Shown here in pieces: positions 535 to 61,629 of a stretch of 64,000 bases of DNA (its first letter is position 1; every line of letters begins with the position of its first letter). This DNA is from Diadema antillarum (Eukaryota). Position numbers and translations under genes: made by a program. Where the stretch lies: positions 1 to 64,000 of the forward strand of contig NW_027271379.1 of the NCBI RefSeq assembly GCF_040938485.1, in the 5' to 3' direction. Below the pieces are notes generated by a model, which did not search any database, was not told the origin of the DNA, and saw only the letters and a program-made list of their open reading frames with translations.

Positions 535-674
535 CCGGCAGTGTGAAGTAGAGGTCATCCACCATTCTCATGCCCAGATCCAGTCTACCTATAATGGGGT
601 GCAGGTAGTCCGGCCAGATGGTCAGGTTCATGATTGTCGGGGCAACGGCATCAAACACCATCTTCATGATCGCA
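535..674 (-). CDS. Exon B14 (140 nt, phase 2-1), last exon confidently seen
   Basis: aaacag|...|gtaaat; AIMKMVFDAVAPTIMNLTIWPDYLHPIIGRLDLGMRMVDDLYFTLP. Confidence 0.85.

Positions 675-61629: not shown

What the first reader, a model, noticed from the sequence alone, without database searches (positions are those of the whole stretch)
535..61629. Hypothesis: a telescoped extracellular lipid conduit
Established knowledge: in ABCA1 cryo-EM structures the helical part of ECD1 forms a hydrophobic tunnel linked to lipid export. The modules here are acidic, Leu/Ile/Phe-rich and look like amphipathic helices. Inference only: stacking 14 or more tunnel segments could form a long lipid-transfer rod across a thick extracellular layer, analogous in function to bridge-like lipid-transfer proteins. 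Alternatively it could be a multivalent lipid-binding scaffold.
Basis: inference. Interest (0 to 1): 0.7.

Follow-up and report, generated by a model that had tools for sequence, protein, structure and literature searches.

The report
Giant ABCA transporter with repeated lid
This sea-urchin DNA encodes the middle of a giant lipid-transporter protein whose outer domain is about 14 tandem copies of the transporter's own apical "lid" piece; the copies look more like a flexible multi-copy array than a rigid lipid pipe.

Summary
On the minus strand, window 536-61634 carries 14 four-exon modules plus a partial fifteenth. They are all-helical, acidic (pI about 4), Leu/Ile/Phe-rich and rich in N-glycosylation sites, each with two invariant cysteines. 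The window is the first 64 kb of a Diadema antillarum contig. The D. setosum orthologue (5667 aa, about 90% identical) and other invertebrate relatives show the array lies in ECD1 of a full ABCA transporter.

New here: the module is a tandem duplicate of the ECD1 apex, meaning the tunnel-top helix plus the flexible lid (ABCA4 aa 99-254, E 1e-10). The first and last copies both sit at the ancestral position, so the array must leave and return to the same spot.

The "telescoped conduit" reading is not supported. AlphaFold2 gives no fixed packing between modules (three modules, pTM 0.31, junction pLDDT below 50). Linker exons vary twofold in length. A one-way rod does not fit the topology. A multivalent lipid-holding lid array fits better, but this is inferred.

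Gap 9372-9523 clips about three codons from the end of one exon. Gap 25852-26022 is intronic.

The parts
59768..61634 (-). Module 1 in the window (partial): exons C 61499-61634, B 60718-60848, A 59768-59953
   Evidence: Mapped to D. setosum orthologue P0100 aa 782-934 at 78-94% identity. Splice phases are 1, 0, 0. Exon A is in alignment A1.
53663..59108 (-). Module 2: exons D 58896-59108, C about 56600-56700, B about 55620-55745 (both approximate), A 53663-53857
   Evidence: The boundaries of C and B come from open frames and AG/GT sites only.
47939..52378 (-). Module 3: exons D 52151-52378, C 50932-51085, B 48572-48702, A 47939-48127
   Evidence: P0100 aa 1059-1304 at 83-92% identity.
44358..47397 (-). 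Module 4: exons D about 47292-47397, C 46007-46142, B 45300-45430, A 44358-44546
   Evidence: Exon D was found by local alignment to P0100 aa 1304-1338.
40953..43745 (-). Module 5: exons D 43624-43745, C 42916-43034, B 41762-41898, A 40953-41147
   Evidence: Phases are 2, 1, 0, 0.
37897..40488 (-). Module 6: exons D 40253-40488, C 39536-39660, B 38791-38912, A 37897-38082
   Evidence: Phases are 2, 1, 0, 0.
33972..37020 (-). Module 7: exons D 36833-37020, C 35921-36069, B 34745-34878, A 33972-34166
   Evidence: Phases are 2, 1, 0, 0.
30330..33045 (-). Module 8 (young): exons D 32807-33045, C 32056-32186, B 31488-31621, A 30330-30524
   Evidence: AG/GT sites located. Paralogy to modules 9-11 is shown. 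C, B and A are absent from the D. setosum model.
27024..29500 (-). Module 9 (young): exons D 29373-29500, C 28407-28534, B 27979-28112, A 27024-27215
   Evidence: Exon A is in NCBI model P0003. The module is absent from the D. setosum model.
25852..26022 (.). Assembly gap, intronic (between exon A of module 9 and exon D of module 10)
22546..25774 (-). Module 10 (young): exons D 25647-25774, C 24773-24900, B 23686-23819, A 22546-22740
   Evidence: The module is absent from the D. setosum model.
18058..20897 (-). Module 11: exons D about 20770-20897, C 19912-20042, B 18870-19018, A 18058-18252
14087..17420 (-). Module 12: exons D 17293-17420, C 16260-16392, B 15592-15713, A 14087-14293
6723..13148 (-). 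Module 13 (five exons): D 12946-13148, extra exon 11635-11763, C 10264-10391, B 9524-9641 (3' end lost in the gap), A 6723-6926
9372..9523 (.). Assembly gap that clips the last few codons and the donor of exon B of module 13
3138..5786 (-). Module 14: exons D 5577-5786, C 4862-4991, B 3810-3931, A 3138-3335
536..2158 (-). Module 15 (partial): exons D 1964-2158, C 536-676. The gene then runs off the contig start at window position 1.
   Evidence: The window starts at contig position 1.

Best explanation
SHOWN. The window is the first 64 kb of Diadema antillarum contig JBFRCO010000491.1. Its minus strand encodes about 2,900 residues of the first extracellular domain (ECD1) of a giant ABCA lipid transporter. 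The repeated unit has four exons, D-C-B-A, and is 194 to about 265 aa long. A whole unit starts and ends in intron phase 0. The unit is a tandem duplicate of the apex of ECD1: the tunnel-top helix plus the flexible 'lid', matching ABCA4 aa 99-254 and ABCA1 about 123-269. In the D. setosum orthologue 17 copies fill the space between aa 98 and aa 3720. The first and last copies are both collinear with ABCA1. D. antillarum carries three more, young copies.

INFERRED. Both ends of the array attach where a single lid attaches, so the array must loop out from the top of the ECD and come back. Each module appears to have two parts. One is a compact cluster of short helices holding the two invariant cysteines (exons B+A, the lid homologue, predicted with confidence). 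The other is a set of longer, poorly constrained helices of variable length (exons D+C).

MOST LIKELY MECHANISM. The transporter core flips or extrudes lipid. The multiplied lid modules are hydrophobic inside, acidic and glycosylated outside, and hollow in the one-copy ancestor. They would act as a flexible multivalent acceptor or holding array, raising capacity or reach at the extracellular or lumenal face. This is more likely than one continuous pipe.

CONFIDENCE. Identity is about 0.9. The multivalent-array mechanism is about 0.35-0.4.
For: - Repeats, phases and invariant Cys.
- Organism and locus: P0003 = XP_071498582 (D. antillarum) maps back to the window exon by exon, and the contig is named.
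- Orthologue P0100 (D. setosum, 5667 aa): aa 782-3157 map to window 61634-536.
- Complete architecture of TM1, array and ABCA core (ABC2_membrane_3, two ABC_tran, R1_ABCA1) in P0005, P0006, P0077 and P0075.
- Module equals the lid segment: the profile hits ABCA4 99-254 at E 1.2e-10. Single copies sit at aa 94-256 of normal-size amphioxus and cnidarian ABCA1-like proteins. P0100 1-284 aligns to ABCA1 1-269, and 3591-5623 to ABCA1 123-2228.
- Lid literature: the lid is flexible and unresolved at about aa 138-271, and hollow (10.64898/2026.06.25.734683; PMC7932691; PMC8219669).
- AlphaFold2: all helices. Exon B+A blocks reach pLDDT 70-90, D+C blocks 35-60, junctions fall below 50, and pTM drops from 0.54 with two modules to 0.31 with three.
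- Composition.
- Coding constraint: dN/dS is below 1 for most paralogous exon pairs. DNA similarity between modules is confined to exons.
Against: - The transporter core of this very gene is not on the window, because the contig ends inside the array. The ABCA assignment therefore rests on orthologues.
- No structure, lipid or expression data exist for this protein. No RNA run could be listed.
- The AlphaFold2 models are only moderately confident, and their low pTM may reflect shallow paralogue alignments rather than real flexibility.
- Foldseek and VIA found no significant structural match, so the lid homology rests on sequence profiles alone.
- Lipid binding by the lid is only suggested, even for ABCA1 and ABCA4.
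Confidence: 0.55

Rival explanations
1. The modules would stack head to tail into a long rigid rod with one continuous hydrophobic lumen, carrying lipid across a thick extracellular layer. It would be an all-alpha analogue of bridge-like lipid-transfer proteins.
For: - The modules derive from the hollow apex of an ABCA ECD (PMC7932691 reports that the lid interior is hollow and that the tunnel is a helical barrel of about 15 A).
- Hydrophobicity is unusually high for a soluble domain, with GRAVY +0.21 against -0.36 for ABCA1 ECD1.
- In the two-module model a helix (residues 191-201) crosses the module boundary without a disordered linker.
Against: - Both ends of the array sit at the ancestral lid position, so the chain must return and a one-way rod cannot form (inference).
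- pTM falls to 0.31 for three modules, with pLDDT below 50 at both junctions.
- Four of the five two-module models had pLDDT 53-58.
- Exon D varies from 122 to 239 nt, one module has a fifth exon, and module length runs from 194 to about 265 aa.
- The homologous region is the flexible lid rather than the tunnel barrel.
Confidence: 0.08
2. The array would have a role other than lipid carriage. It could be a glycosylated, acidic spacer or an interaction and sorting platform. Possible functions are matrix or glycan binding, protection of the membrane surface, or targeting of the transporter to a particular organelle. The array itself would carry no lipid.
For: - The long N-terminal region of mouse ABCA13 is required for vesicular localisation, and its authors speculate that it mediates protein interactions (PMC7948424).
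- The core tree places the giant invertebrate proteins on the ABCA12/13 side of a 99% split.
- C-type lectin domains are inserted in the arrays of Ptychodera, Asterias, Patiria and Acanthaster.
- There are about 2 sequons per 100 aa and the pI is 4.
Against: - A GRAVY of +0.21 with 36% aliphatic or aromatic residues is unusual for a pure spacer or mucin-like region.
- The unit is derived from a part of ABCA ectodomains in which lipid-like densities have been reported (10.64898/2026.06.25.734683).
- No lectin domain was found in the part of the Diadema protein held in the window.
Confidence: 0.25
3. The array would be a decaying or artefactual repeat: pseudo-exons, assembly duplication, or annotation noise with no functional product.
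For: - NCBI splits the locus into fragments such as the 992-aa P0003.
- Two assembly gaps and a contig end interrupt the gene.
- The three young modules are missing from the D. setosum model.
Against: - All 14 A exons are open and keep both cysteines.
- Splice sites and phases are conserved.
- The mapped exons are 76-98% identical (mostly about 90%) to the D. setosum orthologue over aa 782-3157.
- dN/dS is mostly below 1.
- Homologous arrays of 7-27 modules occur in echinoderms, hemichordates, molluscs, annelids, nemerteans, brachiopods and horseshoe crabs. These include intron-free Logan contigs carrying 5484- and 6516-aa ORFs, which I take to be transcript assemblies.
Confidence: 0.03

Closest known systems
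ECD1 lid (plus tunnel-top helix) of ABCA4/ABCA1
   Same: The sequence is homologous: the module profile hits ABCA4 aa 99-254 at E 1.2e-10, and both cysteines align. The first and last modules of the orthologue are collinear with ABCA1. Both are helical, extracellular or lumenal, and glycosylated.
   Different: There is one copy in ABCA1/4/7 and 17 to about 20 in Diadema (up to 27 in Ptychodera). The Diadema copies are much more acidic and more hydrophobic. Each module has an extra exon-D segment with no significant counterpart in ABCA4. No structural match could be obtained.
Vertebrate ABCA13 / ABCA12 (giant ECD1, 'long N-terminal region')
   Same: The architecture is the same: TM1, a multi-thousand-residue ECD1, then the ABCA core. 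In a quick maximum-likelihood tree of the core, the invertebrate giants and ABCA12/13 fall on the same side of a 99% SH-aLRT split from ABCA1/7-like proteins. The ECD1 composition is similar: low K+R and positive GRAVY in Polypterus ABCA13.
   Different: The module is not detectable in vertebrate ABCA12/13 ECD1. There was no HMM hit at E below 1e-3, and hhalign probability was only 15-27%. The tree is unrooted and quick. The ABCA13 region is largely one big exon according to the title of Prades et al. 2002, as cited in PMC7948424. Here every module is split into four exons.
Bridge-like lipid-transfer proteins (VPS13/ATG2/BLTP)
   Same: This is only the proposed functional analogy: a long repetitive hydrophobic protein that might move bulk lipid.
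   Different: BLTPs are built from repeating beta-groove units and act in the cytosol at membrane contact sites. This array is all-alpha, extracellular or lumenal, has no Pfam match, and is part of an ABC pump.
Prosaposin (tandem saposin modules)
   Same: This is a functional analogy only. Both are tandem small helical modules that are disulfide-stapled, acidic and glycosylated, sit on the lumenal or extracellular side, and handle lipid as multiple independent units.
   Different: No sequence relationship was found, with no Pfam SapB hit. There are two cysteines per module here, against six in a saposin (the six is from my own knowledge). This array is tethered to a transporter and is not known to be cleaved.

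Membership tests
ABCA full transporter | Two TMD-NBD halves (ABC2_membrane_3 + ABC_tran twice) with the ABCA R1 regulatory domain, on the same polypeptide as the array | tested here: inconclusive
   The feature is not in the window, because the contig starts inside the array. It is met in the D. setosum orthologue P0100 (precomputed Pfam; blastp to ABCA1). It is also met in P0005, P0006 and P0077.
ABCA full transporter | N-terminal TM1 followed by a large ECD1 before TMD1 (extracellular or lumenal topology of the array) | tested here: met
   This holds in orthologues. The ABCA-type N-terminus and a TM-like segment at about aa 21-43 are followed by the array and then the TMD1 cluster, in P0077 and P0075. 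P0100 aa 1-284 align to ABCA1 1-269. The N-terminus of the Diadema antillarum gene itself lies outside the window.
ABCA ECD1 lid segment | Sequence homology of the repeat unit to the ECD1 apex of solved ABCA proteins | tested here: met
   The A2 profile hits ABCA4 aa 99-254 at E 1.2e-10. Xenopus ABCA1 aa 122-233 scores an independent E of 1e-9 in a nine-sequence search. Amphioxus ABCA1-like aa 102-256 scores 4e-15.
ABCA ECD1 lid segment | Structural similarity of the predicted module to a solved lid | tested here: inconclusive
   The best Foldseek E-value was 0.5 and the best VIA Z was 5.9, all generic helical matches. The lid is unresolved or poorly resolved in the solved structures (PMC8219669).
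ABCA12/ABCA13 clade | Core groups with ABCA12/13 rather than ABCA1/4/7 | tested here: inconclusive
   A bipartition with 99% SH-aLRT separates the giants plus ABCA12/13 from the ABCA1/7-like proteins. The tree is quick, midpoint-drawn and has no outgroup. By raw score the crinoid core is nearest ABCA1, at 37-38% identity.
ABCA12/ABCA13 clade | The giant ECD1 of vertebrate ABCA12/13 is built from the same module | tested here: not met
   There was no HMM hit at E below 1e-3 in seven ABCA12/13 proteins. Only bias-level matches appeared with --max. hhalign probability was 27% and 15%.
Bridge-like lipid-transfer proteins | Repeating beta-groove fold / chorein-type N-terminus | tested here: not met
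   DSSP on both models shows helices only. No Pfam family matched the array.
   Rigid packing is not supported: pTM is 0.31 for three modules and junction pLDDT is below 50. The cavity could not be analysed because model coordinates are not returned.

The most novel reading that the evidence does not exclude
The iterated hollow lid modules would assemble into a there-and-back stalk or a ring, giving a connected lipid-holding lumen on top of an ABCA12/13-clade pump. That would be an all-alpha, extracellular counterpart of bridge-like lipid-transfer proteins. In the same reading, the orphan 'long N-terminal region' of vertebrate ABCA13 is the degenerate descendant of this array.
Probability: 0.08. 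Interest if true: 0.85.

Novelty: new variant of a known kind. Interest (0 to 1): 0.45.

Why it matters
The role of ABCA ectodomains is an open question. PMC8219669 asks outright what the ECD does, and the lid is the least understood part because it is too mobile to resolve. Here evolution has multiplied exactly that part 7 to 27 times in a widespread family of giant invertebrate ABCA proteins. All of these are annotated 'uncharacterized' or 'ABCA1-like', and no Pfam family matched the module in the scans run here.

This offers three things. First, it gives a defined, expressible lid module for lipid-binding and structural work. Second, copy number differs between the two Diadema gene models and far more between phyla. 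Third, it gives a testable origin for the huge ECD1 of the ABCA12/13 clade. Its authors state that the ABCA13 N-terminal region has no homology to known proteins or domains (PMC7948424).

I found no description of this repeat in four full-text literature searches. That is not proof of absence.

Tried and rejected
- Pfam on ten single exons gave nothing.
- Foldseek against the PDB and VIA-align wide, both on the two-module model, gave only generic helical or solenoid matches. The best were E 0.5 and Z 5.9.
- No RNA sequencing runs were listed.
- An eel 'obscurin-like' hit (P0028) looked like a vertebrate link. It does not match the full-module profile and was dropped as a cysteine-periodicity artefact.
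- I looked for the module in vertebrate ABCA12/13 by HMM, by HMM with --max and by hhalign. None gave a significant result.
- Literature searches for giant or repeat ECD1 in sea-urchin or mollusc ABCA proteins found nothing relevant.
- S. purpuratus isoforms differ by exact two-module deletions. I considered this as evidence of module-cassette splicing but did not rely on it. With near-identical 196-aa repeats it may be an alignment artefact of the annotation.
I used the database proteins P0003 and P0100 by reference instead.
- L001 and the window share the same start and offset, but the two strings are not identical overall. I did not inspect where they differ, so as not to read letters under the gaps.

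Full report
WHAT IS IN THE WINDOW

The window has eukaryotic composition (33-44% G+C) and short open frames. An all-against-all comparison of stop-to-stop frames showed the repeated coding pieces lie on the minus strand and recur every 3-7 kb. Iterated profile searches inside the window found 14 copies of the best-conserved exon, which I call A. When trimmed and aligned, their only invariant columns are two cysteines, 26-30 residues apart.

In the transcript each exon A is preceded by three other exon types: D, C and B. The junctions have canonical AG/GT sites. The intron phases recur as D 0/2, C 2/1, B 1/0 and A 0/0, so a whole module is phase-symmetric. In the young modules the exon sizes are 128, 128-131, 134 and 192-195 nt, giving 194-196 aa. 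Similarity between modules at the DNA level is confined to exons. dN/dS between paralogous exons is mostly below 1.

THE ASSEMBLY GAPS (tested first, as asked)

- Gap 9372-9523. An exon B at 9524-9641 reads straight into this gap. Against the orthologue only about three residues plus the donor site are missing. Continuity of frame across the gap cannot be verified.
- Gap 25852-26022. This gap lies in an intron about 75 nt upstream of the acceptor of exon D of module 10. Sister modules have no exon there, and NCBI's model splices over it.

I did not read or infer any gap letters.

ORGANISM AND LOCUS

A profile of the 14 A exons was searched against 1.84 billion representative proteins and returned 66 hits. 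The long ones carry 4-27 matched stretches. P0003 is XP_071498582, an 'uncharacterized protein' of Diadema antillarum. It maps back onto window 27215-5577 exon by exon and is a partial NCBI model of this very locus.

Its contig is JBFRCO010000491.1 of GCA_040938485.1. The window is the first 64 kb of that contig, so the gene runs off the contig start inside the array.

The congeneric full-length orthologue is P0100 (D. setosum, 5667 aa). Its aa 782-3157 map to window 61634-536 at 76-98% identity per exon, mostly about 90%. That model jumps from exon D of module 8 to exon C of module 11. D. antillarum therefore has three extra, frame-preserving young modules. Alternatively, the D. setosum model or assembly lacks them.

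IS IT AN ABCA ECTODOMAIN?

The transporter core is not in the window. The evidence comes from relatives:

- P0005 (6516 aa) carries 16-18 modules followed by ABC2_membrane_3, two ABC_tran domains and R1_ABCA1.
- The crinoid P0006 and the sea cucumber P0077 have the same layout.
- P0077 and the horseshoe-crab P0075 begin with the typical ABCA N-terminus and TM1, then the array, then the TMD1 cluster.
- The crinoid core is 37-38% identical to vertebrate ABCA1 and aligns to solved ABCA1, ABCA4 and ABCA7 from ABCA1 residue about 345 onward.

P0005 and P0075 sit on Logan contigs of 20,548 and 16,890 nt, only slightly longer than their ORFs, so I take them to be transcript assemblies.

WHAT THE MODULE IS

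A profile of 118 whole modules from 18 proteins (A2) hits human ABCA4 aa 99-254 at E 1.2e-10. Both cysteines align. The same profile finds a single copy at aa 94-256 of normal-size amphioxus and cnidarian ABCA1-like proteins. It finds 7-23 copies in brachiopod, oyster, chiton, octopus, nemertean and starfish giants.

In P0100 the profile finds 17 modules between aa 98 and aa 3720. Residues 1-284 align to ABCA1 1-269, and residues 3591-5623 align to ABCA1 123-2228. The array is thus an internal tandem multiplication of the ABCA1/4 segment of about residues 100-270.

In ABCA4 that segment is one tunnel-top helix plus the 'lid'. The lid (about aa 138-271) is the longest unresolved, most mobile part of the cryo-EM structures. 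R140 and N269 serve as the two connectors to the tunnel (10.64898/2026.06.25.734683). The lid interior is hollow (PMC7932691). The ABCA1 tunnel has been proposed as temporary storage or a delivery passage for lipid (PMC8219669).

TESTING THE CONDUIT IDEA

- Topology. The first and last copies occupy the ancestral position, so the chain must leave the top of the ECD and return there. A one-way telescoped rod is excluded. Only a hairpin, a ring or a cluster is possible. This is an inference and the connector description above.
- AlphaFold2 on two modules, with 117 aligned paralogous pairs, gave pLDDT 68 and pTM 0.54. The other four models scored pLDDT 53-58.
- AlphaFold2 on three modules, with an alignment in perfect cysteine register, gave pLDDT 59 and pTM 0.31. 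The confident blocks (70-90) are exons B+A. The D+C blocks score 35-60, and both junctions fall below 50. A pTM near 1/3 is what independently placed units would give. This is absence of support, not refutation.
- Regularity. Exon D ranges from 122 to 239 nt, and module 13 has a fifth exon.
- Fold searches found nothing significant. That is expected, because the lid is not well modelled in the PDB.
- Cavity analysis could not be done, because no coordinates are returned.

In favour of some lipid role:

- The array is far more hydrophobic than ABCA1 ECD1, with GRAVY +0.21 against -0.36.
- K+R is only 3%, the pI is 4.05, and there are about 2 sequons per 100 aa.
- All 17 predicted helices are more amphipathic than their own shuffles. 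This is also normal for any helical bundle.

RELATION TO KNOWN GIANT ABCA PROTEINS

A quick maximum-likelihood tree of the last 1650 residues of 34 proteins gives a 99% SH-aLRT split. On one side are the ambulacrarian giants, the protostome giants and vertebrate ABCA12/13. On the other are ABCA1/7-like proteins of vertebrates, amphioxus and cnidarians. The tree is unrooted and uses a short search.

The module is not detectable in vertebrate ABCA12/13 ECD1. Common descent of their giant ECD1 is therefore a lead, not a result. Nakato et al. report that the ABCA13 N-terminal region has no homology to known proteins or domains and is needed for vesicular localisation (PMC7948424). That keeps a non-lipid, sorting or interaction role alive as a rival.

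VERDICT

- The ABCA origin of the modules is supported and refined: the repeated piece is the lid plus the tunnel-top helix, not tunnel segments.
- The telescoped rod is not supported.
- A flexible multivalent lid array is the best current reading, and it is inferred.
- The protein family is in the databases only as 'uncharacterized' or 'ABCA1-like'. I found no description of the repeat in the literature searched.
- I rate it a new variant of a known kind, of moderate interest.

RULES FOLLOWED

I read no gap letters.

Noticed in passing
window 23686-23819 and 27979-28112 (exon B of modules 10 and 9): These two exons are about 97% identical in DNA (dS 0.10, dN 0). The A exons of the same two modules have dS above 1. 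This looks like exon-limited gene conversion or very recent partial homogenisation.
   Followed up: partly
window 20.7-32.3 kb (modules 8-10): Three whole modules present here are skipped in the D. setosum orthologue model, which jumps from exon D of module 8 to exon C of module 11 in frame. This is either real copy-number difference between congeners or a collapse or skip in the other assembly or model.
   Followed up: partly
window 55770-55815: A run of 46 G on the plus strand, poly-C on the coding strand, sits immediately upstream of the acceptor of exon B of module 2. That is an extreme polypyrimidine tract.
   Followed up: no
window 53882-54413: A GTT/GGT-rich low-complexity stretch lies directly upstream, in the transcript, of exon A of module 2. 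On the minus strand it gives long open frames rich in Thr, Asn and Pro. It is presumably intronic.
   Followed up: no
window 49012-50714: Two direct copies of about 860 bp, 88-95% identical, lie inside the intron between exons C and B of module 3. This is probably a duplicated mobile or satellite element.
   Followed up: no
window 7951-8428, 8546-8635 and 13286-13347: A 152-bp tandem repeat (3.1 copies, 94% matches), an (ACGG)n microsatellite and a (TCAT)n microsatellite lie in introns of modules 12-13.
   Followed up: no
P0106, P0102, P0103, P0104 (S. purpuratus LOC100890089 isoforms): The isoforms differ by deletions of exactly 391-392 aa, which is two 196-aa modules, at three different registers within the near-identical repeats. 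This is either module-cassette splicing or an annotation artefact.
   Followed up: partly
P0001 aa 619-721; also P0096, P0212, P0214: A C-type lectin domain is inserted early in the arrays of the acorn worm and of starfish orthologues. It is not listed for the Diadema setosum orthologue.
   Followed up: no
precomputed Pfam lists: Every ABCA protein there, of normal size or giant, carries PF26955.1. The local Pfam scans did not report it. I could not tell what it covers.
   Followed up: no
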